Under the pieces are notes generated by a model. That model made no database searches. It saw only the letters and a program-made list of their open reading frames with translations, and was not told the origin of the DNA. Shown here piece after piece: positions 50,900 through 64,000 of a stretch of DNA of 64,000 bases. The stretch spans positions 235,984 to 299,983 of IMG/VR virus record IMGVR_UViG_3300046787_000408, one strand, 5' to 3'. Each line of letters opens with the position of its first letter. Position 1 is the first letter of the stretch. Position numbers and translations under genes: made by a program.

Positions 50900-50916
50900 C
50901 TACTGAAAGGACTACT

Positions 50917-51537: not shown

Positions 51538-51544
51538 CACTAAC

Positions 51545-51692: not shown

Positions 51693-52592
51693 ATGACTAC
51701 AACAATCACCATCAAAGACAAAGCAGTAAACACCACATACCAAAACGTTACTGGATTAACAGGCGGCGCAGGCGTTGATGCAGTATTTGATGTAACCAAA
51801 ACCAACGGAACATATTCTGTTGTGCTCGACAGCTTGGCAGCAAGTGCTGGTACAGGCTATGTGGCTGGCGACACAATCACTCTTGCTGGCACAGCCCTGG
51901 GTGGTACAGTTGCCAACAACTTGATCGTTACAGTTGCCACAGTTGGTGCCGCAGGTAAAATTGCCACATTTGGTGTGGTAGGTACAGGTCGTGTTGGCGA
52001 CGGTACAGTTGACGTTGCGGTTGATGTTACTGGTACCGAAGGCGTTGACACCTACACATTTGGGGGCTCCAGCACAGAATTCACTGTGACCAAGGCCGCA
52101 GACAAGATCACAGCAGCCAGCACCCTGGCTACCAATGTTTCATACACTCTTGAAGATCACGAGCGTGTGGTGTTCACAGACAAGGCCATTGCTTATGATG
52201 CTGACGGTCGTGCAGGTGATGTATATGCATTGTTAGCTGCCGCTTTGGGCACAGCAGATGTTACTGATGCGTATACTGGAATTGGTATCCATCTTGCTGA
52301 CGCTGGTTGGACCAACAAGCAATTGGCAGAAGCCTTGTTGGCCACAGACACTTACAAAACTGATGCTGGCGGCGTAAGCACAGAAACTTTCATCAAGCAC
52401 GTTTACAAAAACGTCACAGGTACTGACGCTACATTAGCTGATGTTACCGAACTTACCAATTGGATGAACGGTAACCAGTACAGCCAAGCTGATGTGTTGG
52501 TGATTGCTAGCGAGTTGGCCAGCTTTGAAACTGCTATTGGCTTGACTGGTCTTGCCACTACAGGCATTGACTACACGCCATTTGTTGCCTAA
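51693..52592 (+). CDS. Thr/Gly/Ala-rich protein with C-terminal DUF4214/S-layer-like domain
   Basis: LAEALL...STETFIKHVYKNVTG; SD AAGGA. Confidence 0.6.
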   Translation: MTTTITIKDKAVNTTYQNVTGLTGGAGVDAVFDVTKTNGTYSVVLDSLAASAGTGYVAGDTITLAGTALGGTVANNLIVTVATVGAAGKIATFGVVGTGRVGDGTVDVAVDVTGTEGVDTYTFGGSSTEFTVTKAADKITAASTLATNVSYTLEDHERVVFTDKAIAYDADGRAGDVYALLAAALGTADVTDAYTGIGIHLADAGWTNKQLAEALLATDTYKTDAGGVSTETFIKHVYKNVTGTDATLADVTELTNWMNGNQYSQADVLVIASELASFETAIGLTGLATTGIDYTPFVA

Positions 52593-52651
52593 ATTGACAA
52601 AAAGAGCAACAAAATATTTGACTTTTGTTGCTCTGTCATATATACTACACT

Positions 52652-52750
52652 ATGATGACAGCAATCGCAATCACGTTTAAAAACATACCTGCCAATTATG
52701 AGCAGGCCTATGAGCGCGATTGTATCTCGGGGCTTTGTCGTTGTAGTTAA
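52652..52750 (+). CDS. Leader peptide 1 (MMTAIAITFKNIPANYEQAYERDCISGLCRCS)
   Basis: ATG at the predicted +1 of TTGACT-17-TATACT (52618-52646); stop lies in the loop of the antiterminator hairpin. Confidence 0.6.
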   Translation: MMTAIAITFKNIPANYEQAYERDCISGLCRCS

Positions 52751-52800
52751 CAAAAGTACTACATTCTACAAAGACCCGCACATGATGCGGGTTTTTCTTT
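52728..52800 (+). terminator. Attenuator 1 (antiterminator/terminator)
   Basis: CGGGGCTTTGT/ACAAAGACCCG and TGTAGT/ACTACA versus ACCCGCA-CATGA-TGCGGGT-TTTTCTTT. Confidence 0.7.
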
Positions 52801-52806
52801 ATGTAC

Positions 52807-53029
52807 TAGACCAATAATTGAAAGAGTGTTACAATAGAAACAAGTTAGAGATACAGCGAAGTTTGCAAAGACCCTACAGTGATGCGGGGCTTTTGCAAAA
52901 CAAGTTGACCAGTATTGCACATCGTGTTATACTAGAGGCTAGTTAGGAAGAACAACAACTGCTCCGGAAACGGTAGCACTGCTAGAAGACACAGAAGCAG
53001 TTGACAAATATTCCCAACAGTGTTATAAT
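52807..53029 (+). promoter_or_regulatory. Three tandem sigma70-like promoters
   Basis: TAGACC-17-TACAAT, TTGACC-17-TATACT, TTGACA-17-TATAAT. Confidence 0.75.
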
Positions 53030-53380
53030 AAACACTTAGCAACAAACGATCGAGTAGTTGCGTAGAATTCCTTAAAAATTTACATGTATGATTACCCGGC
53101 AAGACAACACTTGACACGATTTTGATGTTCGGTGATAACAGTCCGTAATGCTGTGAAGCAAAACGTAGCCGGGGATCATATAAAAATGCACATTAGTTAG
53201 AAAGTCCAGCTAAGTTGAGCGTCCCCTGTAAAACGGGGAAAGAGCTAGAATTGCAGGTTAGTATTGCTTTTGTGTGTTTTTATATGATTTTTGATGCACT
53301 ACTTGCCTGAGCGAAAAACTCGTGGTAAACTACAAGAGACAGAGGGTTCGAATCCCTGGGACTGGTAGTGTGTCTTTTAT

Positions 53381-53455
53381 ACTGGGTTCGTCTATCGGTT
53401 AGGACATCAGGTTTTCAACCTGAGAAGACGGGTTCGACTCCCGTACCCAGTACCA
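53381..53455 (+). tRNA. tRNA-Glu(TTC)
   Basis: Cloverleaf; loop TTTTCAA; CCA. Confidence 0.9.
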
Positions 53456-53519
53456 AGTTTATGAGTTCGTCTAGAAACCGGTAAATTGTAGTTTAGTCTA
53501 CAAGCTCGTAATTGATCAT

Positions 53520-53594
53520 GGTGCGTTCATATAATGGTCATTATCCTGGATTGTCTATCCAGAGACGGGAGTTCGATTCTCCCACGCATCGCCA
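53520..53594 (+). tRNA. tRNA-Asp(GTC)
   Basis: Cloverleaf; loop TTGTCTA; GCCA. Confidence 0.9.
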
Positions 53595-53601
53595 AGTTAC
53601 T

Positions 53602-53690
53602 GGATCTTGTTCCCCATTGCCGGCTGTAACCCGGTAGGCATTGTCAAGTGGGGTGGTTGCCAAGTAGTTCGATTCTATCAAGATCCACCA
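53602..53690 (+). ncRNA. Non-canonical tRNA-Tyr(GTA)-like RNA
   Basis: 8-bp acceptor GGATCTTG/CAAGATCC, 4-bp T stem, ACCA; GCCGG-CTGTAAC-CCGGT arm; no normal D arm. Confidence 0.55.
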
Positions 53691-53766
53691 GTTTTATAGG
53701 AGAGTCGCTGCGAAGCGAATTCTTAAACGACCCGTAGAACTCCCGGGCGTCCTGTAGTTAGTATAT

Positions 53767-53851
53767 GGAGAATCCGCCGCAATGGTGTGGCAGGGGACTG
53801 TAAATCCTCCGACTTAGGTCATGACTGGTTCGATCCCAGTATTCTCCACCA
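53767..53851 (+). tRNA. tRNA-Tyr(GTA)
   Basis: Cloverleaf with variable arm; loop CTGTAAA. Confidence 0.9.
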
Positions 53852-53857
53852 ATTTTT

Positions 53858-53997
53858 GTGGTAAGTTTGGTTGACAGGCTATTTGACTGTATGCGTAGCA
53901 GGATTGCAAACCCGAGGGGCATATGGCGATGGGAAGTGATATCACCCGTTTGTAAAAACAGATAGCTAGGCAGGTTCGAATCCTGTTTACTACACCA
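53858..53997 (+). ncRNA. Expanded (140 nt) tRNA-like RNA with Cys(GCA)-like loop
   Basis: GTGGTAA/TTACTAC acceptor, GCAGG-TTCGAAT-CCTGT T arm, ACCA; internal TTGCAAA loop. Confidence 0.5.
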
Positions 53998-54099
53998 AGT
54001 TTATGTCTGGGTCTGACATGGTGTTTCTGATGCGATTGATCACGCAAAGGAGAATGTGGCTCGATACCACGCCCGGCGCCAAATACTAAGGCAATAACA

Positions 54100-54282
54100 A
54101 GTACTAGAGTAGATGGAAACCGACCCATGCGAGACTGCGTGGGCTTCACACTTAGAATGTGACGATGCGAAAGTAAGTCGGTCCAGTAGGGTAAGGAAAA
54201 GTGTTGCTGGCGGAAAAAGCTGCTACCAGACAGAAGTTAAGCGGGCCTAGGCTGACAGTTTAACGCCGTGTACTCTGGAACT
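54100..54282 (+). ncRNA. Orphan structured RNA
   Basis: Closing stem CTAGAGTA/TACTCTGG; internal ACCGAC/GTCGGT and CCCATGC/GCGTGGG. Confidence 0.4.
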
Positions 54283-54351
54283 AATTTATGCTCTATTAGC
54301 TCAATTGGGAGAGGAAAGTAGAGCACGGACTAAATATAGTAGAGGTCTACT

Positions 54352-54741
54352 ATGTTAAAAATTTTTAAATGTCTTTACTGTCAAAAAGAAAATCCGTGCA
54401 AAAAGAATCACATGCACAAGTACTGCAATAATATGTGTCAGAGATTGCACAGCATTACCGAAGCGATGAATGGTGATTCTCCCACTAAAGGAGTTGCACA
54501 AAACTATATGCGGAAATTTGTTGAATACAAATGTGTACATTGTGGAATAGGTTCTGAGTACAACGATAAACCTATAACATTGCAAATTGATCATATTAAT
54601 GGAGTTCGGACTGATCACAGAAAAGTAAATCTGCGATGGTTATGCCCGAATTGTCATTCCCAAACTGAGACTTGGGGATATAAGAATGTTTCAGATGAAG
54701 GTAAACGCAAAATACAACTTGCGTTAAACGGTAAGAAATAG
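54352..54741 (+). CDS. HNH endonuclease (free-standing, homing-type)
   Basis: CVHC...LQIDHING...NLRWLCPNCHSQT; AT-rich; inside the tRNA array. Confidence 0.9.
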   Translation: MLKIFKCLYCQKENPCKKNHMHKYCNNMCQRLHSITEAMNGDSPTKGVAQNYMRKFVEYKCVHCGIGSEYNDKPITLQIDHINGVRTDHRKVNLRWLCPNCHSQTETWGYKNVSDEGKRKIQLALNGKK

Positions 54742-54815
54742 GTCTCAAAGTGTTCATGGACGCACACAACACTGTCACTGTTGAAGAAGGGGATCGTTAC
54801 CCCTTGAGACCGCCA
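54741..54815 (+). tRNA. tRNA-Asp(GTC), second copy
   Basis: Loop CTGTCAC; atypical T loop ATCGTTA. Confidence 0.85.
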
Positions 54816-54822
54816 AGTTAAT

Positions 54823-54900
54823 GGGCGATGACTGTTGTAAAGGATAACAGGCGGCAGTAACTCTGCCGTGACAGTGGTTCGATTCCACTATCGTCCACCA
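54823..54900 (+). ncRNA. tRNA-like RNA with Ala-type acceptor (G3:U70, A73)
   Basis: GGGCGAT/ATCGTCC-A-CCA; T arm AGTGG-TTCGATT-CCACT; 7-bp arm with 5-nt loop instead of a normal anticodon arm. Confidence 0.6.
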
Positions 54901-54907
54901 TGAATAT

Positions 54908-55016
54908 GGGTTGTCAAGGAAGGTCACATGCACGGTGAGTAGCCGTAGGAGCATTATCGAGTGTGCGCCACCGCACTCTTGGTCAGACATGGGTTCAAGT
55001 CCCATACAATCCACCA
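54908..55016 (+). ncRNA. 109-nt tRNA-like RNA with Ala-type acceptor
   Basis: GGGTTGT/ACAATCC-A-CCA; GAC plus ATGGG-TTCAAGT-CCCAT. Confidence 0.55.
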
Positions 55017-55020
55017 AGTT

Positions 55021-55242
55021 TTGTTGTAGTGTTAGCAAGTGAAGTCACGCTAGCGAGGTTTCTTCGAAGGACCGAGTCAGTAGAAGGTTGCGGGTTCGAT
55101 GCCCGACTGGTCGCTTGAGTGGGACTGGTATACATGATGGCGTATCAACTGGATGAATCTCAAGTAACGTACCGAGTCCTAGCCCGGGCTATATGCAAAT
55201 AGGTGAATGGTGTCAATAACGATGGTGACACTACTGCAACAA
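55021..55242 (+). ncRNA. Orphan structured RNA
   Basis: Closing stem GTAGTGTTA/TGACACTAC; internal T-loop hairpin CGGG-TTCGATG-CCCG. Confidence 0.4.
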
Positions 55243-55251
55243 ATTCAACAT

Positions 55252-55326
55252 GTCGCATTAGACTTCTGGTGAGGTCATCACCCTTTCAAGGTGACCAGAC
55301 GGGATCGTAACCCGTATGCGACTCCA
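55252..55326 (+). tRNA. tRNA-Glu(TTC), second copy
   Basis: Loop CTTTCAA; T loop ATCGTAA. Confidence 0.85.
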
Positions 55327-55421
55327 TTGATAAACACACTTACAGATCCGCCCGAGTAGTAAGGGAGACAGCGACTAACCGTTGAAGGACTGTTTAAAAG
55401 TGTGTTTTTCAATGGAACAAT

Positions 55422-55513
55422 GCCCCTATAGTTTAATGGTAAAACGGCGGATTTATATCCCGTAAGCAACAGATAATTGGTTCATCTGGGTTCAATTCCC
55501 GGTGGGGGTACCA
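55422..55513 (+). tRNA. tRNA-Ile(TAT) with long variable region
   Basis: Loop TTTATAT; ~22-nt variable region; ACCA. Confidence 0.7.
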
Positions 55514-55520
55514 AAAAGTT

Positions 55521-55708
55521 AAGCTGGCCTGCCTGCGTCTAAAACTCAATGACGATGGGCCCAACTACCAGGGACTCCAGTTGATCCACTGCCTCTGGGG
55601 ATTAAGTTGCCATGACTGCTAGTCACAGTCGAACCATGTTGGTGGAAGGAAGGGAGTGCAGTGATGTATTCCGTACCTTTAAACGCAGGGTAGTAGGCGG
55701 ATCAGTTT
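55521..55708 (+). ncRNA. Orphan ~190-nt rod-like RNA (6S-like size and shape, unverified)
   Basis: CCTGCGTCTAAA/TTTAAACGCAGG closing helix. Confidence 0.35.
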
Positions 55709-55783
55709 ATCCAATTTGTGTTGACAAGCAATGTTGTTTGTCATACAATAGATACTTAGACAGTAACAAAAGTCTTTAAACAC

Positions 55784-55876
55784 ATGCACATCAAGGCGCC
55801 GTACACGCCGATGATATGTGGTATTCAGCACTGCCACTGGCAGTGTGAGGCAGGTTCGAATCCTGTATAGTGTGCA
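55784..55876 (+). ncRNA. tRNA-like RNA without CCA, with its own promoter
   Basis: TGCACAT/GTGTGCA stem; GCAGG-TTCGAAT-CCTGT; promoter TTGACA-17-TACAAT (55721-55749). Confidence 0.4.
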
Positions 55877-55939
55877 GTTGTTTACAGATTTGGTAAAATT
55901 AGTTGTTGACAAGTTCAACAATTGATGTTACAATAAGAT

Positions 55940-56828
55940 TCCGGGGCAGTTTAATGTCCTACTAGGTAGCTTGCTATCTAGTGAAGAATAAGCTGAGTGA
56001 TCAGCCCAAAGGAGGTATGCCTACATAACTCCGCCAGCAATGGTTCGTTTAGACAAGCCTGCTCAGACTCGCGAGAGTCCCTTTACTGATAAGACCGGTG
56101 GAGGTAACAATGACGCTGGATGTTGTGGAAAGAACGTTTGCTTACCGGCCCGCAAGGGTAACCGGAGCAGATGGAAAGTAACAGGTGGTGCTGACTTCAC
56201 AACTAAACCAGTCCAGTTAATTGGTATGAGAAAGGGTAGTGTATTTGTCCGAGGTGTTGCAACCAAGGGCTCGTATGCAGTTTGAGTGGTTGGTGGATTG
56301 GCAGCAATGTCAAGACGCAGATCGCAAAAGACGACTGAGTAGTTCGCAAGACGAAAGGTACGTGGTGTGTTGTATTGTGTATTCCAAAAGAGTATGCAGC
56401 AACTGAGTCAGCACATCGCAGTAGGTTGTTATAAGCTAATGGTAAGCTAACTCCCTGTTAAGGAGTCGACTGCGGGTTCAACTCCCGCTAACGATTAAAA
56501 TGCAAAGACTGACTCGGTCGTATGTGAAAAGCATCTAATACTTGAGGCGCAAGCTAATCAAGTCAGACGTAACTCGCAAGGTGAAATCTGTTTATGCTGG
56601 AAGTTTCGTAAGGTGTTAGCGCACTTGAATGGCTCGCAAGGTCAACGGGATAGATGGCGTAGAATAGCATACGGCGACAAGACTACTGCCTGTCTTTAAA
56701 AACGGCGATGCTGATAGCAGACATGGATACCTGGCAACAGGGCTGTGTGGAAGTCGAGAGAAAGCTGGCTCGCAAGGCTGGTAATAATGCTCGAGGTGCT
56801 ATTGGGAGAGATGTATTCTCAGTCCTCC
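55940..56828 (+). ncRNA. GOLLD-like large ornate RNA
   Basis: ~890 nt without a credible ORF; promoter TTGACA-17-TACAAT (55906-55934); at least six CGCAAG-capped hairpins; lies in a phage tRNA array; contains an embedded tRNA. Confidence 0.75.
56425..56495 (+). tRNA. tRNA-Asn(GTT)-like domain embedded in the large RNA (no CCA)
   Basis: GTTGTTA/TAACGAT; AGCT-AATGGTA-AGCT; ACTCC-CTGTTAA-GGAGT; GCGGG-TTCAACT-CCCGC. Confidence 0.75.
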
Positions 56829-56933
56829 ACTATTCTAAAACACATTACATGCACAATGGGTAGACATGGTAGTATTGCTTGTGATACAGCAGTATAACGC
56901 TGTGGTAGTGTATTTCAGAATGGTAAATAATTG

Positions 56934-57007
56934 CGCGGGTAGGGTGGTCACCACACCGGTCTCATAAGCCAGGTGCATCGGCAGTTCAAATCTGTCACCC
57001 GCATCCA
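56934..57007 (+). tRNA. tRNA-fMet-like (CAT), degenerate D arm
   Basis: C1:A72 mismatch; loop CTCATAA; CCA. Confidence 0.65.
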
Positions 57008-57139
57008 AATTCGTAGTTTTTCAGCATGTGGTATAAATACAACACTGAAAAACATTTAGTGGTTGACAACAATCACTAAGTAAAGTATAATTAACACTTG
57101 AACAGCAACAAAGCTGTTTGAGTAACCCAAGGAAACAAA

Positions 57140-57271
57140 ATGACTTCTATTACTTGTTCACTGTTAACCAAACAAATGCTCCAGGCGACACAAACCTGGT
57201 CGCACGCCTTTGGTCGCGTGAATAGTATTCCGGGAGTCTCAGGGTCTTGTGAAGGTGGTGGTTACGCATAA
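57140..57271 (+). CDS. Leader peptide 2 (MTSITCSLLTKQMLQATQTWSHAFGRVNSIPGVSGSCEGGGYA)
   Basis: Promoter TTGACA-17-TATAAT (57063-57091); SD AAGGA; stop in the antiterminator loop. Confidence 0.7.
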   Translation: MTSITCSLLTKQMLQATQTWSHAFGRVNSIPGVSGSCEGGGYA

Positions 57272-57329
57272 TAGCAGTAACTAACAAACTCAAAAGACCC
57301 TGGAACTAAAAACTCCAGGGTTTTTCTTT
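57240..57329 (+). terminator. Attenuator 2 (antiterminator/terminator)
   Basis: CAGGGTCTT/AAGACCCTG and GGTTAC/GTAACT versus CCCTGGA/TCCAGGG-TTTTTCTTT. Confidence 0.75.
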
Positions 57330-57511
57330 ATGTGTAATGAGTAACGAGGACTCAGCCAGCACACTAAACTAGGCAAACGGGCGGACAGGACACATGAACG
57401 TGTGGTGAGAACACACTAGTAAGACTCCTGGTCGGGGTATCAACCCCGTCATGTGGTGTAGCAATACACTGCATTCTAAAACACACTTGCTGAGTATGTT
57501 TTAGAATGTAT

Positions 57512-57586
57512 GGGCTGTTAGTGATAGTGGTAGCACAGTGGCTTTGCAAGCCTCGGGCAGGAGTTCGATTCTCCTACGGTCCACCA
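57512..57586 (+). tRNA. tRNA-Ala(TGC)
   Basis: G3:U70; loop TTTGCAA. Confidence 0.88.
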
Positions 57587-57595
57587 TATGTTAAT

Positions 57596-57670
57596 GTATC
57601 TCTGGTGTAATGGCAGCATCGCGGATTCCAAATCCGTTAGGTCAGGGTTCGAGTCCTTGGGGGTACGCCA
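57596..57670 (+). tRNA. tRNA-Trp(CCA)
   Basis: Loop TTCCAAA; G73. Confidence 0.9.
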
Positions 57671-57678
57671 ATTTTTGT

Positions 57679-57752
57679 TCGGGAATGGTGTAGAGGTAAC
57701 ACAACAGACTTTGACTCTGTCGTCCCTGGTTCGATCCCAGGTTCCCGTGCCA
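57679..57752 (+). tRNA. tRNA-Gln(TTG)
   Basis: Loop CTTTGAC. Confidence 0.9.
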
Positions 57753-57760
57753 GTTTTTGT

Positions 57761-57836
57761 GGGGGTATAGCTCATCTGGTAGAGCAGGTGCTTTGCAAGC
57801 ATCAGGTGGCAGGTTCGAGTCCTGTTGCCTCCACCA
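57761..57836 (+). tRNA. tRNA-Ala(TGC), second copy
   Basis: Canonical cloverleaf. Confidence 0.93.
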
Positions 57837-57837
57837 T

Positions 57838-57912
57838 AGCCGTGTAGCTCAGAGGAAGAGCGCTGTCTTGATAAGGCATAGGTCGACATTTCGAAATTGT
57901 CCATGGCTACCA
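57838..57912 (+). tRNA. tRNA-Ile(GAT)
   Basis: Loop TTGATAA. Confidence 0.85.
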
Positions 57913-57920
57913 ATTTTTAT

Positions 57921-57999
57921 TCCGAGAAACTCGAGCAAGGTGCATGAGCTTGACTGTTAATCAATGGTTAGGTGGGTTCGATTCCCACACTCGGAGCCA
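57921..57999 (+). tRNA. tRNA-Asn(GTT)
   Basis: Loop CTGTTAA; atypical D arm. Confidence 0.8.
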
Positions 58000-58041
58000 A
58001 TTTTTTTGTAGTAGGCGAGAGTGCCTACTAAGTAGTTTACT

Positions 58042-58131
58042 GGTGCGGTCCTATAATGGTATTAGAGCAGATTGCTAATCTGTCGCTCGGCGTAATCCGG
58101 GTTCTGAGTTCGAGTCTCAGTCGCACCGCCA
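58042..58131 (+). tRNA. tRNA-Ser(GCT)
   Basis: Loop TTGCTAA; long variable arm. Confidence 0.9.
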
Positions 58132-58139
58132 GACAACAT

Positions 58140-58215
<76 letters not shown>

Positions 58216-58222
58216 TGTTTGT

Positions 58223-58297
58223 TCCTCGATAGCTCAGTGGTAGAGTGCCGGACTGTTAATCCGTTGGTCCCTGGTTCGAGCCCAGGTCGAGGAGCCA
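58223..58297 (+). tRNA. tRNA-Asn(GTT), second copy
   Basis: Canonical cloverleaf. Confidence 0.92.
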
Positions 58298-58304
58298 TAA
58301 TTTA

Positions 58305-58379
58305 GCCCTTGTATCCTTAGTGGTAGAGGTCCTGTTTTGTAAGCAGGGTGTGGTGGTTCGATTCCATCCTGGGGCACCA
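58305..58379 (+). tRNA. tRNA-Thr(TGT)
   Basis: Loop TTTGTAA. Confidence 0.85.
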
Positions 58380-58434
58380 CAAACATAGTCAATACTCTCC
58401 CTTGACGAGCTAGGTCACTAGACTATTTTCTTTC

Positions 58435-58508
58435 GCCCTATTAGTATAATGGTATTACACCTGTTTTGTAATCAGGTTACGGCAGTTCGATTCTGTCATG
58501 GGGCACCA
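58435..58508 (+). tRNA. tRNA-Thr(TGT), second copy
   Basis: Loop TTTGTAA. Confidence 0.88.
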
Positions 58509-58559
58509 CTTTCAAGCCTATACTCAATCCTGCCGTGACGACTGTCCCTGGGCTTTTAT

Positions 58560-58636
58560 CTTTGTATGGCGCAGCCTGGTAGCGCACTAGTCTGGGGGAC
58601 TAGGGGTCGCAGGTTCGAACCCTGCTACAAAGACCA
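58560..58636 (+). tRNA. tRNA-Pro(GGG)
   Basis: Loop CTGGGGG. Confidence 0.9.
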
Positions 58637-58645
58637 ACTTTCAAT

Positions 58646-58723
58646 CTCTGTGTAATGTCAATCTGGTAGACGGCCTGATCTGGAGTCAGGAGGCTGTACG
58701 TTCGAATCGTACCATGGAGACCA
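58646..58723 (+). tRNA. tRNA-Pro(TGG), atypical C33/A37
   Basis: CCTGA-TCTGGAG-TCAGG. Confidence 0.8.
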
Positions 58724-58730
58724 ATTCAAC

Positions 58731-58806
58731 GCCGCGGTAGCTCATCAGGTAGAGCAGCAGACTGAAAATCTGTGTGTGGCTGGTTCGAGTCCAGCTCGTG
58801 GCACCA
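58731..58806 (+). tRNA. tRNA-Phe(GAA)
   Basis: Loop CTGAAAA. Confidence 0.92.
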
Positions 58807-58899
58807 TTTTATCCTTGAGTTAAGCGGGGCCGTATACACCCTTGCCAATAGAGTTAGTAATGTGTTCTGCAACAGACACCTCAGGGGCCAATTTACGAT

Positions 58900-58977
58900 G
58901 CGTCTCTAGTTCAACTGGATAGAACACCGGCCTACGAAGCCGTGAGGTTGGGGATTCGAATTCCTCGGGACGCACCA
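58900..58977 (+). tRNA. tRNA-Arg(ACG)
   Basis: Loop CTACGAA. Confidence 0.9.
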
Positions 58978-59041
58978 AAAAACAGTTGACAACATTCTGT
59001 AATTGTTGTATAATTAGAACTTAAACAAAAGAGGTAACACT

Positions 59042-59065
59042 ATGAAACGTTCAGGTAAACGATAG
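59042..59065 (+). CDS. Mini leader ORF MKRSGKR
   Basis: Promoter TTGACA-17-TATAAT (58986-59014); SD AAGAGG; stop abuts hairpin 59065-59101. Confidence 0.5.
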   Translation: MKRSGKR

Positions 59066-59127
59066 TGTCATCCTAGACCCCCGTATGGTCCTGGATGGCA
59101 CGTAAAAGACAATTCTTTACGATCCAT

Positions 59128-59204
59128 CCCTTCAAGATGTTACTGGTTAGCATACCGGACTCTTAATCCGAGAAGTCTGAGTTCGAATCTCAGTGGAGGG
59201 ACCA
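59128..59204 (+). tRNA. tRNA-Lys(CTT)
   Basis: Loop CTCTTAA. Confidence 0.82.
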
Positions 59205-59207
59205 TAT

Positions 59208-59285
59208 GGGGGTATAGTGTTAACGGTTTAGCACAGCGGACTTTTAATCCGCCAGGTCAGGGTTCGAATCCCTGTGCCCCTACCA
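59208..59285 (+). tRNA. tRNA-Lys(TTT)
   Basis: Loop CTTTTAA. Confidence 0.9.
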
Positions 59286-59411
59286 TATGCAAACACATTA
59301 ACCTGCGAAAAAGAATTCCGATGCATAATCGGCCAGTGTATAGTGTGTTTACATATGGTATTAATCTATCGACGGGTAGACACCATGCTGGGGAGTAATT
59401 AACCTCAGGAA

Positions 59412-59484
59412 CTCGCGGTCTTCTAAGTGGTAAGAAAGCCCCGTTATGGGGGTGAATGCAGGTTCGAACCCTGCCCGCAATGAG
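59412..59484 (+). pseudogene. Degenerate tRNA
   Basis: Intact D and T arms; 6-nt anticodon loop; broken acceptor stem; no CCA. Confidence 0.5.
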
Positions 59485-59503
59485 TTTGCTAGACTTCTTT
59501 GGT

Positions 59504-59578
59504 GTGGCTATGTTGTAACGGTTAGCAACAGAGATTGTGATTCTCTTAGTCTGGGTTCGATTCCCAGTAGTCACCCCA
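59504..59578 (+). tRNA. tRNA-His(GTG)
   Basis: Loop TTGTGAT; C73; no encoded G-1. Confidence 0.88.
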
Positions 59579-59588
59579 AAGAGGTTTT

Positions 59589-59663
59589 GGTTGTATGGCG
59601 TAGACGGATGCGCACGGGCTTCATAAGCCCAGGAGGTTGGATCGATACCAACTACAACCACCA
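59589..59663 (+). tRNA. tRNA-Met(CAT)
   Basis: Loop TTCATAA; T loop ATCGATA. Confidence 0.82.
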
Positions 59664-59664
59664 C

Positions 59665-59739
59665 GGGTCTTTAGTTCAACGGATAGAATGCCATGCTTCG
59701 AACTTGGCGATGTGGGTTCGATTCCTGCAGGACCCGCCA
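59665..59739 (+). tRNA. tRNA-Arg(TCG)
   Basis: Loop CTTCGAA. Confidence 0.88.
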
Positions 59740-59747
59740 AACAACAG

Positions 59748-59794
59748 TTGACAAATAAACATGCTTGCGTTATAATACAAGCTGTTCTTTAAAA
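59748..59794 (+). promoter_or_regulatory. sigma70 promoter plus boxA-like element
   Basis: TTGACA-17-TATAAT followed by TGTTCTTTAAAA. Confidence 0.7.
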
Positions 59795-59814
59795 ACTTAA
59801 TTCAAGATTAAAGT

Positions 59815-59888
59815 GCCTGGGTAGTTAAATGGTATAACAAGCGGCTGATAACCGCTAATCACAAGTTCAATTCTTGTCCTAGGTACCA
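59815..59888 (+). tRNA. tRNA-Ile(GAT), second copy
   Basis: Loop CTGATAA. Confidence 0.88.
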
Positions 59889-59889
59889 A

Positions 59890-60060
59890 TTAAAACTTTT
59901 CAATGAAATTCATGGCGTCTTCCATGCTGGTAAAATATCGCATGGTCAGGCGTTCGTTGTAAATATCATTGACAAAGATGTAACACACAGAACCTGTGTC
60001 GTTGACGCTCAAGTGTATTTGTACACTGCCGTTAGCTGCAATAAAGTTTCTTGTTCGCAT
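59890..60060 (-). CDS. Small antisense-oriented protein within the tRNA array (56 aa)
   Basis: MRTRNFIAANG...; TAAATA upstream on minus strand; fits exactly between two tRNAs. Confidence 0.55.
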   Translation of the reverse strand: MRTRNFIAANGSVQIHLSVNDTGSVCYIFVNDIYNERLTMRYFTSMEDAMNFIEKF

Positions 60061-60072
60061 CGTGTATTTAAC

Positions 60073-60146
60073 GCGGGGTTGGTATAGTGGCTGTGCTCTA
60101 GCCTTCCAAGCTAGTGAGACGAGTTCGATCCTCGTACCCCGCTCCA
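60073..60146 (+). tRNA. tRNA-Gly(TCC)
   Basis: Loop CTTCCAA. Confidence 0.9.
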
Positions 60147-60153
60147 TATTTTT

Positions 60154-60229
60154 GCCTGGTTGCGCAGAGAGGTTATGCATCTCCTTTACACGGAGAACGA
60201 TGTCAGTTCGAGTCTGACACCAGGTACCA
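60154..60229 (+). tRNA. tRNA-Val(TAC)
   Basis: Loop TTTACAC. Confidence 0.88.
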
Positions 60230-60238
60230 GTTAGTTTT

Positions 60239-60312
60239 CTCGGTATGGTGAAATGGTATCACTGAACGTTTGGGACGTTCGAGCGTAGGTTCGATTCCTG
60301 CTACCGAGACCA
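60239..60312 (+). tRNA. tRNA-Pro(TGG), second copy
   Basis: Loop TTTGGGA. Confidence 0.9.
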
Positions 60313-60457
60313 AGAGCAGCGTATGAGTTACATCATTCAGTATGAGTCACAAGGTACCGCGGTAAATCCTTGGGCAAGCAATAGTACGTACATCAATGTA
60401 ACAGGTGGTAGTGATCTACTAACGGGCCAGCCTCAAAAATTGTGTCCACCAATCTAT

Positions 60458-60535
60458 GCACAGGTGGCGGAGAGGCCCAACGCAAGGGATTGCAAATCCC
60501 TAAAACCGTGAGTTCAAATCTCACCCTGTGCTCCA
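60458..60535 (+). tRNA. tRNA-Cys(GCA)
   Basis: Loop TTGCAAA; U73. Confidence 0.9.
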
Positions 60536-60541
60536 AACAAC

Positions 60542-60633
60542 GGAAAGTAATGCAGCGGGGATGGTCCTGCGACTGGCCTTGAAAACCAGGTTCTCTTAAC
60601 AGGGATGGGGTTCGACTCCTCTGCTTTCCGCCA
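60542..60633 (+). tRNA. tRNA-Ser(TGA) with 8/4 fold
   Basis: 8-bp acceptor GGAAAGTA/TGCTTTCC; 4-bp T stem; loop CTTGAAA; long variable arm; G73. Confidence 0.8.
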
Positions 60634-60658
60634 ATAAGTAAGTGCAAAGGATTTAGTG

Positions 60659-60832
60659 ATGGAAAACAAAACACAACTATTTGAAAACAAGATCACTCTT
60701 GAGCGCTACATTTGCGACAATGTTCGCATGGTTCGCACACTTGAAGGACAAGAGTTCCTGAGTGTACGTCGAGAAGGCGAAACTCGCAAATTTTTAATTC
60801 GTCGAGACAGTTTGCGTCAAGTAAACAGTTAA
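60659..60832 (+). CDS. Small protein within the tRNA array (57 aa)
   Basis: SD AAGGA; MENKTQLFENK...; stop abuts the next tRNA. Confidence 0.6.
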   Translation: MENKTQLFENKITLERYICDNVRMVRTLEGQEFLSVRREGETRKFLIRRDSLRQVNS

Positions 60833-60907
60833 GTCTCTATAGTTCAATGGATAGAACAAGTTCCTCCTAAGAATTAGATACAGGTTCGATTCCTGTTGGA
60901 GACACCA
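60833..60907 (+). tRNA. tRNA-Arg(CCT)
   Basis: Loop CTCCTAA. Confidence 0.9.
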
Positions 60908-60914
60908 AACAAAT

Positions 60915-60999
60915 GCGTTAGTGGTGGAATGGTATACACGTTGGTCTTAGAAGCCAATGCCCTAGTGGATTGAGAGTTCGAGTCTCTCCTGACGCACCA
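60915..60999 (+). tRNA. tRNA-Leu(TAG)
   Basis: Loop CTTAGAA; variable arm. Confidence 0.9.
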
Positions 61000-61050
61000 T
61001 GAACTCGCTTTTGCTGACAGCGTATAATAGGACAAGTAGTCAGCACACTT

Positions 61051-61124
61051 AGGTCATTAGCTCAAAGGTAGAGCGCTTGGTCGACATCCAAGATACAGCG
61101 GATCGATACCGTTATGACCTACCA
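61051..61124 (+). tRNA. tRNA-Val(GAC)
   Basis: Loop TCGACAT (C33); T loop ATCGATA. Confidence 0.8.
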
Positions 61125-61131
61125 AACACAT

Positions 61132-61208
61132 GCCCCGGTGGTGGAATTGGTAGACACGCAACGTTGAGGTCGTTGTATCTGTGGGTTCGAGTCCCATCTG
61201 GGGTACCA
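61132..61208 (+). tRNA. tRNA-Leu(GAG) with short variable loop
   Basis: Leu-type D arm; loop TTGAGGT; 5-nt variable region. Confidence 0.85.
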
Positions 61209-61214
61209 AACAAC

Positions 61215-61298
61215 GCGACTGTGGTGGAATGGTATACACAGCAGACTTAAAATCTGCCGCTTAATTGATTGAGGGTTCAAGTCCCTCCAGTCGCACCA
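61215..61298 (+). tRNA. tRNA-Leu(TAA)
   Basis: Loop CTTAAAA. Confidence 0.92.
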
Positions 61299-61624: not shown

Positions 61625-63109
61625 ATGTTAATAAAAAATGTAGATGTGGTACTTCTTTGCCATTCGTTGATATCTTTTAAAAAAGCTGGTCCATATAGAA
61701 TTGCTACCGAGCTTCGATCAAATGGGTACTCATGTCAAATTATTGATGCCGCCTGGTATTTTGATCAAAATGAACTCAAAACAATACTAGATTTTTGCAT
61801 AGGTCCAGATACAAAAATTGTTGCATGGAGCAGTCCATATGCTGACATGCACGAAAAAGAACAATGGGGTGTGGGATTTAGAGAACACCTGACTGTTGAG
61901 TTTCATGAGGAATTCATTATTGACTATGCAAAAACCATCAACAACAAGATCAAATTTGTAGTAGGTGGGCCTACTGCTTACAAAAGGCAATCTGACCCGG
62001 GAATCAACACTGTATTTTATGGCATGAGTGATGCTGCCATTGTTGCTTATCTCAAGTTCCTAGAAGGAAAAAATCCGTTTTTTCAGTACACAGTTCAAGA
62101 TGGTACCATGATAGTAGATGGTAATTCTTACAATCTGTCATGGGAGTTCAACCAAAGCTTGATAGAGTACCAGCCAGAAGACAATATACTACATGGCGAT
62201 GCAACCATGATTGAGATTGCTAGAGGTTGTATTTTCAAATGCGATTTTTGTAGTTACCCATTAAACGGTAAAAAGAGCAATGAATATATCAAGTACAAAG
62301 ATACCTTGTACAACGAATTTTTGCACAACTACACACATTTTGGAATTAAAAAATACATTGTGTCCGATGACACATTTAACGACAATCTGCAAAAGTTACA
62401 AATGATGGCCGAGATTGCACAGTCTCTTCCGTTTAAACTTGAACTAGCTTGCTATATCAGGATTGACCTAATACGGGCACATCCTGAACAGTATCAATTG
62501 CTCAAAGACATTGGTCTTGCTGGAGCATTTTTTGGTATAGAAAGCTTGAATCACCAATCGCTCAAGTCTATAGGTAAAGGATTGCATCCTGACAAAGTGG
62601 TTGCAGAACTGTATCAATTTAGAGATCAACTGCCCAATTGCGGCACTATGGGTAGTTTTATTGCAGGACTTCCTTATGAGACCAAACATAGTCTAGAGAA
62701 CACAGTGTCGCTGACCATGGATCACGATTTCCCTATTGACATATTGCGCATGGAACCATTGACTATAAACTCAATGAGAAAGCACAATTCAAGTGAGTTT
62801 GAGAAAAATTCTTCAAAATATTTTTCTATTGATCCAAGCAAACGCAACTATCTTGGACATGAATTTTGGCACAATGGAGATTTTGATCTAGCATATGCCA
62901 AGGATTTTTGTCAAGATTTCATGAAAAAATTAAGCAGTACTGGTAGAAATCGAATTGGCGGATTCCAAGTAATGGCCTTGCACAACTACTATCCGGATGT
63001 ACCGGCGGCCCATGTGTCCCCAAGTCAACTGCCAGTAACATTGGAAATGCAACAAGCAAAACTTGATAGGTACAAGAGCATGGTATTTGACAACAAAATC
63101 AAAACATAG
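61625..63109 (+). CDS. B12-binding-type radical SAM protein
   Basis: EIARGCIFKCDFC, SDDTFN, FFGIES, FIAGLPYET. Confidence 0.85.
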   Translation: MLIKNVDVVLLCHSLISFKKAGPYRIATELRSNGYSCQIIDAAWYFDQNELKTILDFCIGPDTKIVAWSSPYADMHEKEQWGVGFREHLTVEFHEEFIIDYAKTINNKIKFVVGGPTAYKRQSDPGINTVFYGMSDAAIVAYLKFLEGKNPFFQYTVQDGTMIVDGNSYNLSWEFNQSLIEYQPEDNILHGDATMIEIARGCIFKCDFCSYPLNGKKSNEYIKYKDTLYNEFLHNYTHFGIKKYIVSDDTFNDNLQKLQMMAEIAQSLPFKLELACYIRIDLIRAHPEQYQLLKDIGLAGAFFGIESLNHQSLKSIGKGLHPDKVVAELYQFRDQLPNCGTMGSFIAGLPYETKHSLENTVSLTMDHDFPIDILRMEPLTINSMRKHNSSEFEKNSSKYFSIDPSKRNYLGHEFWHNGDFDLAYAKDFCQDFMKKLSSTGRNRIGGFQVMALHNYYPDVPAAHVSPSQLPVTLEMQQAKLDRYKSMVFDNKIKT

Positions 63110-63121: not shown

Positions 63122-63355
63122 ATGTATAAATTAATAAACAAAGCAGGAACAGAGTTAGATGGGTTCAACACCCTAGACTCTGCTATGCAAGCGGCAAAAG
63201 CAGTGGGATTCTTTGTAACAATCAAAGGACCCGACTTTGAAGTTTGTGGTATTTTTGGTGTGGACACAATTGCAAACGGCTTGTGTCCTGATGGTGTTAA
63301 ATACGATTGGAACAAAGCCAGTCGCATAGGTGCGGCCAAACGAGTTCGAGCATAA
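63122..63355 (+). CDS. Hypothetical protein
   Basis: Promoter TTGACA-17-TATAAT immediately upstream (leaderless). Confidence 0.6.
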
Positions 63356-63756
63356 TGATACACGAATTGTTTGAAGGATTAGACGTAAAGACGAAAACTT
63401 GCGGGATGTGTTTAAAAGACCTCCCTGTGGGCATGTTCGGAACAGACGGTGGTGCAAAGTATCTAAGATACGAGTGTAAACCGTGTGCAAAGAAACAATC
63501 AGCTTTGCTAAAGAAGATCAAACTATCCGCACCAGTTAGGCCCACAGATTATCGATGCCCTATTTGTGATAAAAACGAAGAGGAAGCTAAAGGACACAAT
63601 CCTAATAAAAAAGGAGTATGGTGTGCAGACCATGATCATGCCACTGGAAAATTTAGAGGTTGGTTGTGTCATAAATGCAATTTAGGATTAGGTAATTTTA
63701 ATGATGACATTGACAGATTATCTAGAGCAAAAGCATATTTAAAGGAGCGAGTATGA
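63355..63756 (+). CDS. Endonuclease VII-like HNH protein
   Basis: CPIC...[22 protein letters not shown]. Confidence 0.85.
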
Positions 63757-64000
63757 AACGAGTAATAGAGGTTAGAGCTGCCGAAGGTGGCGAGGATTCA
63801 AAACTGTTTGTGAAAGATCTAGCACAAGCCTATATCAAATTTGCACAAAGCAAGGGCTGAGCTACCCGCTTGATAAATGAGTATCAAGGCGAACTTCACT
63901 TGGAAGTACAGGGTACTGATTTATCTGGCTTACTAAACGAAGCCGGTGGACACCGAATACAGCGTGTTCCGCCAACTGAGCGCAAAGGTCGCGTTCATAC
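63753..64000 (+). CDS. RF1-like peptide chain release factor lacking domain 1, with in-frame TGA at codon 36; 3'-truncated by the window
   Basis: SD AAGGAG; [15 protein letters not shown]...[11 protein letters not shown]...[20 protein letters not shown], same frame on both sides of the TGA (63858-63860). Confidence 0.85.

What the first reader, a model, noticed from the sequence alone, without database searches (positions are those of the whole stretch)
63753..64000. Release factor gene with an in-frame UGA at a conserved Trp position
Seen: RF1-like sequence (PPT motif, HRIQRVP..GRVH) continues in the same frame after TGA 63858-60. The TGA falls where RF1 proteins usually have Trp (Y..A...(G/R)W). 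The protein starts at domain 2, as PrfH does. Other genes here use TGA as a true stop, so this is not genome-wide recoding. Established: prfB is autoregulated by an internal UGA through +1 frameshifting. Inference: read-through rather than frameshift control, so the phage factor is made only when UGA termination by host RF2 is weak. This would be another translation-stress sensor beside the tRNA attenuators. A sequencing error or pseudogene is possible.
Basis: partly seen in the sequence, partly recalled or inferred. Interest (0 to 1): 0.8.

Follow-up and report, generated by a model that had tools for sequence, protein, structure and literature searches.

The report
Release-factor gene gated by in-frame UGA
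A giant freshwater phage, more than a hundred of its relatives and some bacteria carry a shortened release-factor-1 gene that can be completed only if the ribosome reads through a strictly conserved UGA stop at a tryptophan position, a form of control once proposed for release factors and, in the papers I could search, not reported for bacterial-type ones.

Summary
An RF1-like gene lacking domain 1 starts at ATG 63753, has an in-frame TGA at 63858-60, and continues in the same frame past the window end. An overlapping contig carries it on to an intact GGQ domain and a TAA stop. The TGA aligns with the conserved Trp of solved RF1 structures. All 166 related viral loci I fetched (104 distinct sequences, down to about 55% identity) have TGA there, never TGG, TAA or TAG. 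dN/dS is about 0.1 on both sides, over a tree of about 26 substitutions per third-codon site. Synonymous change is suppressed just 3' of the stop. TGA is an ordinary stop in this phage (38 of 82 genes), and no UCA-anticodon tRNA was found. More distant relatives have TGG at the site. Bacterial homologues carry either the same in-frame TGA or, in Myxococcota, a prfB-style CUU UGA C +1 frameshift site in the same alignment column (further downstream in Thiobacillus). Best reading: programmed UGA read-through, probably as Trp by tRNA-Trp(CCA), so that output depends on RF2-dependent termination efficiency. Expression, the inserted residue and the sensor role are untested. The nearest precedents are prfB and the Mimivirus release factor. 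I found no report for RF1-type genes.

The parts
63742..63747 (+). Shine-Dalgarno sequence AAGGAG, 5 nt upstream of the start codon
   Evidence: Read directly. A strong AAGGAG-like site precedes the ATG in most of the 80 relatives, so initiation does not look weak.
63753..63857 (+). Codons 1-35 of the short RF1-like gene (start of domain 2)
   Evidence: Pfam PCRF and NCBIfam prfA positions 115-146. dN/dS is 0.13 across relatives.
63858..63860 (+). In-frame TGA (codon 36) at the conserved Trp position: the proposed read-through site
   Evidence: TGA in 166 of 166 related viral loci, covering 104 distinct sequences. It aligns with the Trp of solved RF1 structures. No read variants. More distant relatives have TGG.
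63861..64000 (+). Codons 37-82 in the same frame; the gene runs 433 nt past the window end to a GGQ domain and a TAA stop
   Evidence: dN/dS is 0.11 for codons 37-225. The AlphaFold model of homologue P0003 superposes on ribosome-bound RF1 domains 2-4 with TM 0.90-0.92.
63840..63896 (+). Zone of suppressed synonymous change around and 3' of the TGA (codons 30-48): the likely read-through context
   Evidence: The observed/expected ratio of synonymous differences falls to 0.42-0.5 here, against about 1.0-1.2 over most of the gene. The base after the stop is A in 53 relatives, G in 25, C in 2 and never U. The preceding codon is Gly in 79 of 80.
63867..63891 (+). Candidate small hairpin starting 6 nt after the TGA (weak evidence)
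   Evidence: 87.5% of cells pair, but only one pair covaries. RNAalifold gives -0.15 kcal/mol. Local folding energy is unremarkable, at rank 0.28 within the gene.
63969..63977 (+). PPT, the RF1-type P-x-T tripeptide, within Q-R-V-P-P-T...H-T
   Evidence: The RF1 reading-head residues are kept, so UAA/UAG specificity is inferred and UGA recognition is not expected.
57596..57670 (+). Phage tRNA-Trp (anticodon CCA): candidate near-cognate reader of the UGA
   Evidence: ARAGORN. It has U11-A24, the state of the Hirsh UGA suppressor, and a G27.U43 wobble at the top of the anticodon stem. All four phage tRNA-Trp genes examined have A24. This is suggestive only, because A24 is common in bacterial tRNA-Trp (PMC13092985).
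63355..63756 (+). Upstream neighbour: endonuclease VII gene whose TGA stop overlaps the RF start codon (ATGA)
   Evidence: Pfam PF02945. It shows TGA acting as a genuine stop 100 nt upstream of the in-frame TGA. The gene is absent at this place in relatives L023 and L048.

Best explanation
The gene encodes a class-I release factor of RF1 type that has lost domain 1, the RF3/L11-contacting domain. It sits inside the phage's tRNA island. Ribosomes initiate efficiently, but most terminate at UGA codon 36 through host RF2 and release a 35-residue peptide. A fraction read the UGA in frame, most likely by near-cognate pairing with tRNA-Trp(CCA) from the host and/or the phage. That restores the ancestral Trp and completes the 226-residue factor. 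Output is then set by the competition between RF2 and tRNA-Trp at this one codon. The factor keeps the RF1 reading head (UAA/UAG), so it cannot terminate its own synthesis at UGA. The control is therefore cross-regulation by RF2 activity rather than prfB-style autoregulation. Shown here: the conserved in-frame TGA, purifying selection on both sides, an intact RF1 fold, TGA as a normal stop elsewhere in the phage, and no cognate suppressor tRNA in the sequence examined. Inferred: read-through itself, Trp as the inserted residue, the codon specificity, and the sensor role.
For: TGA is the codon in all 166 related viral loci (104 distinct sequences), never TGG, TAA or TAG, and always in frame 0. 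Database proteins that show W at the site are code-4 gene calls of TGA. dN/dS is 0.13 upstream and 0.11 downstream. The tree length is 10.6 substitutions per site overall and 25.8 at third positions, so a neutral stop codon would not have survived. There is a trough of synonymous change at and 3' of the stop. The base after the stop is never U, the strong-termination context according to PMC5289835. The site aligns with the Trp of RF1. More distant short RF1 genes have TGG there. GGQ is intact, the model has pLDDT 90, and it superposes on ribosome-bound RF1 with TM 0.9. No UCA-anticodon tRNA appears among the 40 tRNAs of this phage or in the flanks of about 100 relatives. The phage tRNA-Trp has the A24 state. 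Bacterial homologues carry either the same in-frame TGA (Thalassospira, Pararhizobium, Rhodovibrio) or a CUU UGA C +1 site with an upstream GGGAG or GGGGG, in the same alignment column in Myxococcota and 11 codons further downstream in Thiobacillus. These are independent stop-codon gates in one gene family. Truncated RF1 lacking domain 1 is reported to be active in vitro and in vivo (PMC1586002, citing Mora 2003).
Against: There is no transcript, ribosome-profiling or peptide evidence; the one metatranscriptome examined did not cover the locus. No strong stimulatory RNA structure was found. The UGA-A and UGA-G contexts are also common at genuine stops in this phage. About 46% of the phage's genes end in UGA, so read-through must stay low or be site-specific. 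One lineage (P0124) has deleted the codon outright, so Trp is not indispensable. Three frameshift-type homologues use UAG instead of UGA, which fits autoregulation better than RF2 sensing. The host is unknown.
Confidence: 0.62

Rival explanations
1. Constant throttle. The UGA only keeps the level of a potentially harmful extra release factor very low, about 1% of initiations, and has no regulatory sensing role.
For: A strong Shine-Dalgarno sequence combined with a leaky stop gives low output. No strong stimulatory structure was found. Jeudy et al. proposed a similar buffering role for the Mimivirus factor.
Against: A weak ribosome-binding site would give the same result, yet TGA is fixed across about 26 substitutions per third-codon site. 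Relatives have repeatedly evolved stop-based gates of two mechanistic kinds, which points to a property specific to stop codons.
Confidence: 0.18
2. True autoregulation. The short factor itself recognises UGA through broadened specificity, so the in-frame UGA is a prfB-like negative feedback loop or an RF2-backup switch.
For: Homologues use the canonical prfB cassette, SD-like sequence plus CUU UGA C. Three use CUU UAG C, which an RF1-type factor would read, so in those the loop would be autoregulatory.
Against: The reading head is RF1-type: Q-RVP-P-T...H-T is kept, and by the tripeptide rule a Pro at the first position restricts the second base to A (Ito 2000 as cited in PMC1586002). Abundant host RF2 would swamp any self-feedback at UGA.
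Confidence: 0.1
3. Dedicated decoding. An undetected suppressor tRNA or a late-infection code switch reads UGA as Trp, as in TGA-recoded phages.
For: TGA-recoded Jade phages carry RF1, TrpRS and a suppressor tRNA together. One distant relative (the P0128 clade) sits on a contig that looks like code 4. Only about 69 kb of this roughly 340-kb genome was examined.
Against: 38 of 82 genes here end in TGA, many as ATGA overlaps. No other in-frame TGA was found. No UCA anticodon appears among several hundred tRNAs in the islands examined.
Confidence: 0.06
4. Broken or split gene. It is a pseudogene or an assembly error, or it makes two separate polypeptides with re-initiation after the stop.
For: Gene callers split it. 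One distant Logan contig (L177) does look degraded.
Against: The stop is conserved in 166 of 166 loci, dN/dS is about 0.1 on both sides, and reads agree. There is no conserved in-frame start codon or Shine-Dalgarno sequence after the stop; codon 40 is CTG, CTA, CTT or TTG.
Confidence: 0.02
5. Selenocysteine is inserted at the UGA.
For: A UGA followed by a small hairpin superficially resembles a bacterial SECIS element.
Against: The site is Trp in homologues, not Cys. The hairpin is weak and shows no real covariation. No tRNA-Sec was found.
Confidence: 0.01

Closest known systems
prfB (RF2) programmed +1 frameshift autoregulation
   Same: [quoted passage not shown] Homologues of the phage gene in Myxococcota and Thiobacillus carry the same cassette, an SD-like sequence plus CUU UGA C.
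   Different: In the phage the frame does not change, and there is no CUU U slippery site or conserved SD-like element. The encoded factor is RF1-type and is not expected to read UGA, so the loop would be cross-regulation rather than self-regulation.
Mimivirus/Megavirus class-I release factor R726/mg280 (Jeudy et al. 2012, PMC3521657)
   Same: It is a virus-encoded release factor whose synthesis needs read-through of an in-frame UGA. Trp insertion by a virus-encoded tRNA-Trp carrying a Hirsh-like A in the D arm was proposed. It is the only recoded gene in those genomes.
   Different: That factor is eRF1/aRF1-type in a eukaryotic virus and needs a frameshift as well. An omnipotent factor can autoregulate at its own stop. 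The UGA there was not reported to lie at a conserved Trp. The phage factor is bacterial RF1-type and lacks domain 1.
Read-through of the coat-gene UGA in RNA phage Qbeta (A1 protein)
   Same: It is a phage UGA read at low efficiency as Trp by tRNA-Trp in a standard-code host (from my own knowledge, not tested here).
   Different: In Qbeta, read-through adds a C-terminal extension to an already functional protein. Here the protein upstream of the stop is only 35 residues, and read-through is obligatory for any function.
PrfH (RFH), the domain-1-less release-factor paralogue paired with RtcB2
   Same: It lacks domain 1 and has about 200-230 residues with a GGQ motif.
   Different: The sequence score is well below the family cutoff (43 bits against 166.65). 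The fold match is weaker (TM 0.70 against 0.90-0.92 for RF1). The P-x-T motif is retained here, no RtcB gene lies upstream, and no recoding is described for PrfH in PMC1586002.
RF1 in the code-change module of TGA-recoded Jade phages (Borges et al., bioRxiv 10.1101/2021.08.26.457843)
   Same: It is a phage-encoded RF1 associated with UGA-to-Trp decoding and with tRNA genes.
   Different: Those RF1 genes are written in the standard code, while many late genes of those phages carry in-frame TGA and a UCA suppressor tRNA is present. Here the RF1-like gene is the only gene seen with an in-frame TGA, and TGA is a frequent stop.

Membership tests
RF1 (prfA; TIGR00019 / NF001859) | PCRF and RF-1 domains with a GGQ motif | tested here: met
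   Pfam PF03462 and PF00472. GGQ lies at L002:225-233.
RF1 (prfA; TIGR00019 / NF001859) | P-x-T tripeptide and RF1-type reading-head residues | tested here: met
   PPT within QRVPPTE...RVHTS aligns with PVT and PAT of solved RF1 structures.
RF1 (prfA; TIGR00019 / NF001859) | N-terminal domain 1 (about 105 residues), with a score above the curated equivalog cutoff | tested here: not met
   The match starts at profile position 107-115. The score is 196 bits against cutoffs of 400 and 423.
RF1 (prfA; TIGR00019 / NF001859) | Fold of domains 2-4 as in ribosome-bound RF1 | tested here: met
   The model has pLDDT 90.4 and superposes on RF1 with TM 0.90-0.92 and rmsd about 2 A.
RF1 (prfA; TIGR00019 / NF001859) | Peptide release at UAA and UAG but not UGA | not testable with these tools
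   This is inferred from motif conservation only.
PrfH (TIGR03072) | Score above the family cutoff | tested here: not met
   40-43 bits against a cutoff of 166.65. The PDB PrfH chain scores 30.7 bits and TM 0.70.
PrfH (TIGR03072) | RtcB-family gene immediately upstream | tested here: not met
   Upstream lie an endonuclease VII gene, a 77-residue ORF and a radical SAM gene. Relatives have an unrelated small ORF upstream.
prfB-type programmed +1 frameshift | CUU UGA C shift site with an SD-like stimulator, and the downstream ORF in the +1 frame | tested here: not met
   The window has GGC TGA GCT with the ORF continuing in frame 0, as do all phage relatives. The feature is met in Myxococcota and Thiobacillus homologues.
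Programmed stop-codon read-through | In-frame stop conserved among homologues, with purifying selection downstream | tested here: met
   166 of 166 loci have TGA. dN/dS downstream is 0.11.
Programmed stop-codon read-through | Enhanced conservation at synonymous sites next to the stop | tested here: met
   The observed/expected ratio is 0.42-0.5 over codons 30-48.
Programmed stop-codon read-through | Read-through product detected | not testable with these tools
   No RNA coverage was found, and no proteomic data are available here.
Genome-wide TGA-to-Trp recoding (code 4) | TGA not used as a stop, in-frame TGA in many genes, and a tRNA with anticodon UCA | tested here: not met
   38 of 82 genes end in TGA. 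No other candidate in-frame TGA was found. No UCA-anticodon tRNA was found.

The most novel reading that the evidence does not exclude
A widespread family of RF1 paralogues lacking domain 1, in jumbo phages and in Alpha-, Beta- and Gammaproteobacteria, Myxococcota and Acidobacteriota, is made only through a stop-codon gate early in the gene: UGA read-through in some lineages and a prfB-like +1 frameshift in others. The gate would measure RF2-dependent termination efficiency and couple the supply of RF1-type activity to it. This would be the read-through form of release-factor control that was hypothesised before prfB was sequenced and that the 2016 Atkins review says had not been found in bacterial RF genes. 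In phages it would be tuned by the phage's own tRNA-Trp.
Probability: 0.4. Interest if true: 0.9.

Novelty: new variant of a known kind. Interest (0 to 1): 0.85.

Why it matters
Recoding in release-factor genes is a textbook example of translational autoregulation, but it is known only as the +1 frameshift of prfB and the combined read-through and frameshift of the Mimivirus factor. The Atkins et al. 2016 review (PMC5009743) says that an early in-frame stop with the ORF continuing in the same frame has not been found in RF2 genes, and that the UAG/RF1 counterpart is also unknown. This locus and its relatives are that arrangement in an RF1-type gene, but with the stop codon the product should not be able to read. 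If confirmed, three things follow. First, dsDNA phages and bacteria would gain a new, deeply conserved case of programmed read-through. Second, it would define a new RF1 paralogue family whose role could be tested in cultured strains that carry it (Thalassospira xianhensis, Pararhizobium sp. BT-229, Rhodovibrio sodomensis, Nannocystis, Thiobacillus denitrificans). Third, it would show that jumbo phages tune termination as well as tRNA supply. There is also a practical point: current gene callers either truncate these genes or translate them with code 4, so the feature is hidden in databases.

Tried and rejected
**Sequencing error or strain polymorphism.** Rejected. Contigs from three DNA runs show no variant at the TGA, although neighbouring bases vary, and 104 distinct homologous sequences agree.

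**Pseudogene.** Rejected by dN/dS of about 0.1 on both sides of the stop and an intact GGQ domain.

**Genome-wide code 4.** Rejected.

**Frameshift in the phage gene.** Rejected. The frame is unchanged in every phage relative. Both alternative frames close within 4-8 codons, inside the conserved CCUGAUAAAUGAG (read from the sequences).

**Cognate suppressor tRNA.** None was found in the window, in L002 or in about 100 flanking regions. Whole genomes could not be scanned.

**Stimulatory RNA structure.** A small hairpin is possible, but RNAalifold, pair counts and local folding energy give no real support.

**Re-initiation after the stop.** There is no conserved start codon.

**PrfH membership.** Rejected.

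**Close relatives in cultured phages.** None was found above 42.5% identity.

**RNA evidence.** A metatranscriptome from the same study did not cover the locus.

**Literature.** Eight full-text searches found no description of an in-frame UGA in a phage or bacterial RF1-type gene. The library does not hold most subscription-journal papers, so a prior report cannot be excluded.

Full report
**The locus.** On the + strand a strong Shine-Dalgarno sequence (AAGGAG, 63742-47) precedes ATG 63753. Thirty-five sense codons follow, then TGA at 63858-60, and the same frame stays open to the window end, encoding ...[18 protein letters not shown]. Both pieces match the PCRF domain. NCBIfam prfA aligns piece 1 to profile positions 115-146 and piece 2 from position 164, so the protein begins at domain 2 of RF1.

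**The rest of the gene.** The window is the last 64 kb of a 299,983-bp IMG/VR contig. A 41,414-bp contig from the same metagenome overlaps its final 127 nt, the length of an assembler k-mer, and carries the remainder. That remainder holds an intact RF-1 domain with GGQ and ends at TAA, giving 226 codons in all.

**The phage.** It has a T4-like family-B DNA polymerase. The nearest isolates are Sinorhizobium phage Phosso (50.7% identity) and Agrobacterium phage Atu_ph07 (47.3%). The runs that hold the sequence are mostly freshwater metagenomes.

**Is the stop real and non-random?** TGA is an ordinary stop codon in this genome. In a non-overlapping set of 82 ORFs, 38 end in TGA, 39 in TAA and 5 in TAG. 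Twenty-two of the TGA stops are ATGA arrangements, including the endonuclease VII gene whose stop overlaps the RF start codon. No other gene shows a convincing in-frame TGA. Contigs from three DNA runs, one of them an independent marine sample, vary at neighbouring positions but not at 63858-60.

**Comparative evidence.** Two scans of IMG/VR returned 160 loci, and exact-protein look-ups added more. Every one of 166 loci, representing 104 distinct gene sequences with protein identity down to about 55%, has TGA at this codon. None has TGG, TAA or TAG, and all continue in frame 0. Database proteins of about 222 residues that show W at the site turned out to be TGA translated under code 4 on short contigs. 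The 172-186-residue entries in the same hit list begin just downstream of the stop, as expected of truncated gene calls; their DNA was not checked individually.

**Selection.** dN/dS is 0.13 for the 35 upstream codons and 0.11 downstream. The tree length is 10.6 substitutions per site overall and 25.8 at third positions. A neutral or decaying stop codon could not have persisted over that much divergence.

**Which residue belongs there?** In alignments to solved structures the site falls on the Trp of T. maritima RF1 (KGW) and E. coli RF1 (RRW). More distant short RF1-like genes (44-49% identity) have a genuine TGG at the site (P0122, P0130, P0134). One lineage (P0124) has deleted the codon exactly, reading GGC GCT ACT where the phage family has GGC TGA GCT ACC. 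In the tree, TGA, TGG and other states interleave among the deep branches, while the jumbo-phage clade is uniformly TGA. A one-step change from TGG to TGA, together with continued function, fits Trp insertion by near-cognate tRNA-Trp(CCA).

**tRNA evidence.** No UCA-anticodon tRNA occurs among the 38 tRNAs of the window, the 2 just downstream, or the tRNA islands that flank the gene in about 100 relatives. The phage's own tRNA-Trp has U11-A24, the state created by the Hirsh UGA-suppressor mutation, and a G27.U43 wobble at the top of the anticodon stem. All four phage tRNA-Trp genes I examined have A24. PMC13092985 describes such variants as promoting UGA reading, but it also shows A24 to be common, so this is a lead and not a test.

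**Signals around the stop.** After correction for pairwise divergence, synonymous differences fall to 0.42-0.5 of expectation over codons 30-48, that is, at the stop and about 35 nt 3' of it. The preceding codon is Gly in 79 of 80 relatives (GGC in 64). The base after the stop is A in 53, G in 25, C in 2 and never U. PMC5289835 reports +4U as the context that reduces read-through. A small hairpin starting 6 nt after the stop pairs in 87.5% of cells, but it shows almost no covariation, RNAalifold gives it no energy, and local folding energy is unremarkable. I therefore attribute the constraint to linear sequence context rather than to a stable structure. The conserved CCUGAUAAAUGAG also places stop codons in both alternative frames, so ribosomes that slip at the pause would terminate quickly. 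That last point is my own observation, not a tested function.

**What the protein is.** By HMM score the order is RF1 (196 bits), then RF2 (118), then PrfH (43). All three scores are below the curated whole-protein cutoffs, because domain 1 is missing. An AlphaFold model of a homologue (pLDDT 90.4) superposes on ribosome-bound RF1 domains 2-4 with TM 0.90-0.92, against 0.70 for PrfH. The RF1 reading head (Q-R-V-P-P-T...H-T) is kept, so I infer UAA/UAG specificity. Domain 1 is reported to be dispensable for peptide release and needed only for the interplay with RF3 (PMC1586002). The gene's own terminator is TAA in 72 of 80 relatives.

**Homologues in bacterial genomes.** A scan of one genome per GTDB species found the same family in bacteria.
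- Six Alphaproteobacteria have the same frame-0 TGA at the Trp site. Three are cultured strains: Thalassospira xianhensis MCCC 1A02616, Pararhizobium sp. BT-229 and Rhodovibrio sodomensis DSM 9895.
- About 25 Myxococcota genomes (among them Nannocystis exedens and N. punicea) and one Acidobacteriota MAG have CTT TGA C/G, in most cases preceded by an SD-like GGGAG-type sequence 3 nt upstream, with the rest of the gene in the +1 frame. That is the canonical prfB cassette. The Leu codon occupies the Trp-site column.
- Thiobacillus denitrificans and two related genomes have the same cassette 11 codons further down.
- Two proteobacterial MAGs have an in-frame TGA about 14 codons after the Trp site.
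- Three genomes use CTT TAG C.
- All twelve genes I checked have GGQ, and eleven of them end in TAA.

These recoded forms fall into two separate groups of the family tree and are interleaved with uninterrupted genes, which implies several independent origins. A stop-codon gate early in the gene is therefore a recurrent, selected property of this gene family.

**Mechanism proposed.** Efficient initiation is followed by a contest at UGA-36 between RF2 and tRNA-Trp. Only the read-through fraction yields the factor. Because the product should not read UGA, output would report RF2-dependent termination efficiency, and in the phage also the supply of tRNA-Trp, rather than the product's own level. 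The sequence-level facts above are shown. Read-through itself, the inserted residue, the codon specificity and the sensor role are inferred.

**Rivals.** I considered a constant throttle, genuine autoregulation through broadened specificity (favoured by the three UAG cases), an unseen suppressor tRNA or late code switch, a broken gene, and selenocysteine. Each is weighed in its own section of this report.

**Comparison with what is known.** The closest systems are prfB and the Mimivirus/Megavirus release factor, which needs UGA read-through plus a frameshift and for which a virus tRNA-Trp with a Hirsh-like D arm was proposed (PMC3521657). The Atkins 2016 review states that an early in-frame UGA with the ORF continuing in the same frame was once hypothesised for RF2 but never found, and that the UAG/RF1 counterpart is unknown. 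TGA-recoded Jade phages encode RF1, but in the standard code. I found no description of the arrangement seen here, within the limits of the searchable library. I therefore file it as a new variant of a known kind, recoding-gated release-factor synthesis, and not as a member of prfA, prfH or the prfB frameshift class.

**Limits.** There is no expression data and the host is unknown. Only about 69 kb of a genome of roughly 340 kb or more was readable. The synonymous-site analysis is a simple pairwise method. The frameshift sites in bacterial homologues were read from sequence only.

Noticed in passing
L191-L225 (genome contigs), e.g. L220 Nannocystis exedens DSM 71, L221 N. punicea FL3, L193 Thiobacillus denitrificans DSM 12475: Domain-1-less RF1-like genes (PPT motif, GGHRWQ variant) have an N-terminal ORF ending in CTT TGA C/G, usually preceded by an SD-like GGGAG- or GGGGG-type sequence, with the rest of the gene in the +1 frame. 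This is a prfB-type programmed frameshift cassette in a gene that is not prfB. L214, L225 and L184 have CTT TAG C instead.
   Followed up: partly
L185-L190 (Thalassospira xianhensis, Pararhizobium sp. BT-229, Kiloniella, Rhodovibrio sodomensis, Rhodospirillales and Sphingomonas MAGs): The same frame-0 TGA at the Trp site occurs in alphaproteobacterial genomes. In the two loci scanned (L185, L186) the neighbouring ORFs mostly lack Pfam matches, which may indicate prophage or mobile DNA. Three carriers are cultured strains usable for experiments.
   Followed up: partly
window 63355-63756: An endonuclease VII (PF02945) gene sits between the 77-residue ORF that ends ...KRVRA and the RF gene. In relatives L023 and L048 that ORF abuts the RF gene directly, so this looks like a homing-endonuclease insertion. 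A second HNH gene lies at 54352-54741, inside the tRNA island.
   Followed up: partly
window 63874-64000 = L002:1-127: The assembly breaks inside the RF gene with a 127-nt overlap between two contigs of the same sample. Logan contigs show several co-occurring related strains that share this conserved stretch, which probably tangled the assembly graph.
   Followed up: partly
window 46074-61298 and L002:569-645, 2105-2178: A tRNA island holds 38 tRNAs covering all 20 amino acids, with 2 more downstream. In most relatives the RF gene is embedded in the island. tRNA-Leu(CAA) starts 9 nt after the RF stop codon, so the mRNA 3' end may be made by tRNA processing. A PF04308 RNaseH-like gene follows in this phage and in several relatives (L083-L085).
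   Followed up: partly
RF gene codons 156-178 (L002:345-413): A second trough of synonymous variation (observed/expected 0.43-0.6) lies in the long helix before domain 4. It has no obvious explanation, and local folding there is weak.
   Followed up: no
L178/L179 (P0124), L173/L174 (P0128), L177 (P0168): Three variants of the gate were seen. In one the TGA/Trp codon is precisely deleted, on a 181-kb contig. In another, TGG is kept and a TGA lies 4 codons later, on an AT-rich contig whose neighbouring gene also has an in-frame TGA (probably code 4). The third is a frame-disrupted copy that looks degraded.
   Followed up: partly
database proteins P0001-P0120: Automatic gene calls for this family fall into two length classes: about 172-186 residues beginning just after the stop, and about 222 residues with W at the site. 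The three long entries whose DNA I checked are TGA translated under code 4. The recoding is therefore hidden in protein databases, and JGI names these proteins 'peptide chain release factor 1'.
   Followed up: yes
window 55422-55513; L083:941-1031: ARAGORN reports an unusually long (92 nt) tRNA-Ile with anticodon TAT in the window, and a 'tRNA-???' with a two-base anticodon in a relative. They may be intron-containing or aberrant tRNAs.
   Followed up: no
window 40675-42072, 13917-16580, 61625-63109, 12448-13536: Other genes in the window include a nicotinamide phosphoribosyltransferase, a T4-like DNA polymerase (nearest isolates Phosso and Atu_ph07) and two radical SAM genes. Together these point to a jumbo phage of the Rak2/Atu_ph07-like group, with a host perhaps among the Proteobacteria.
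   Followed up: partly
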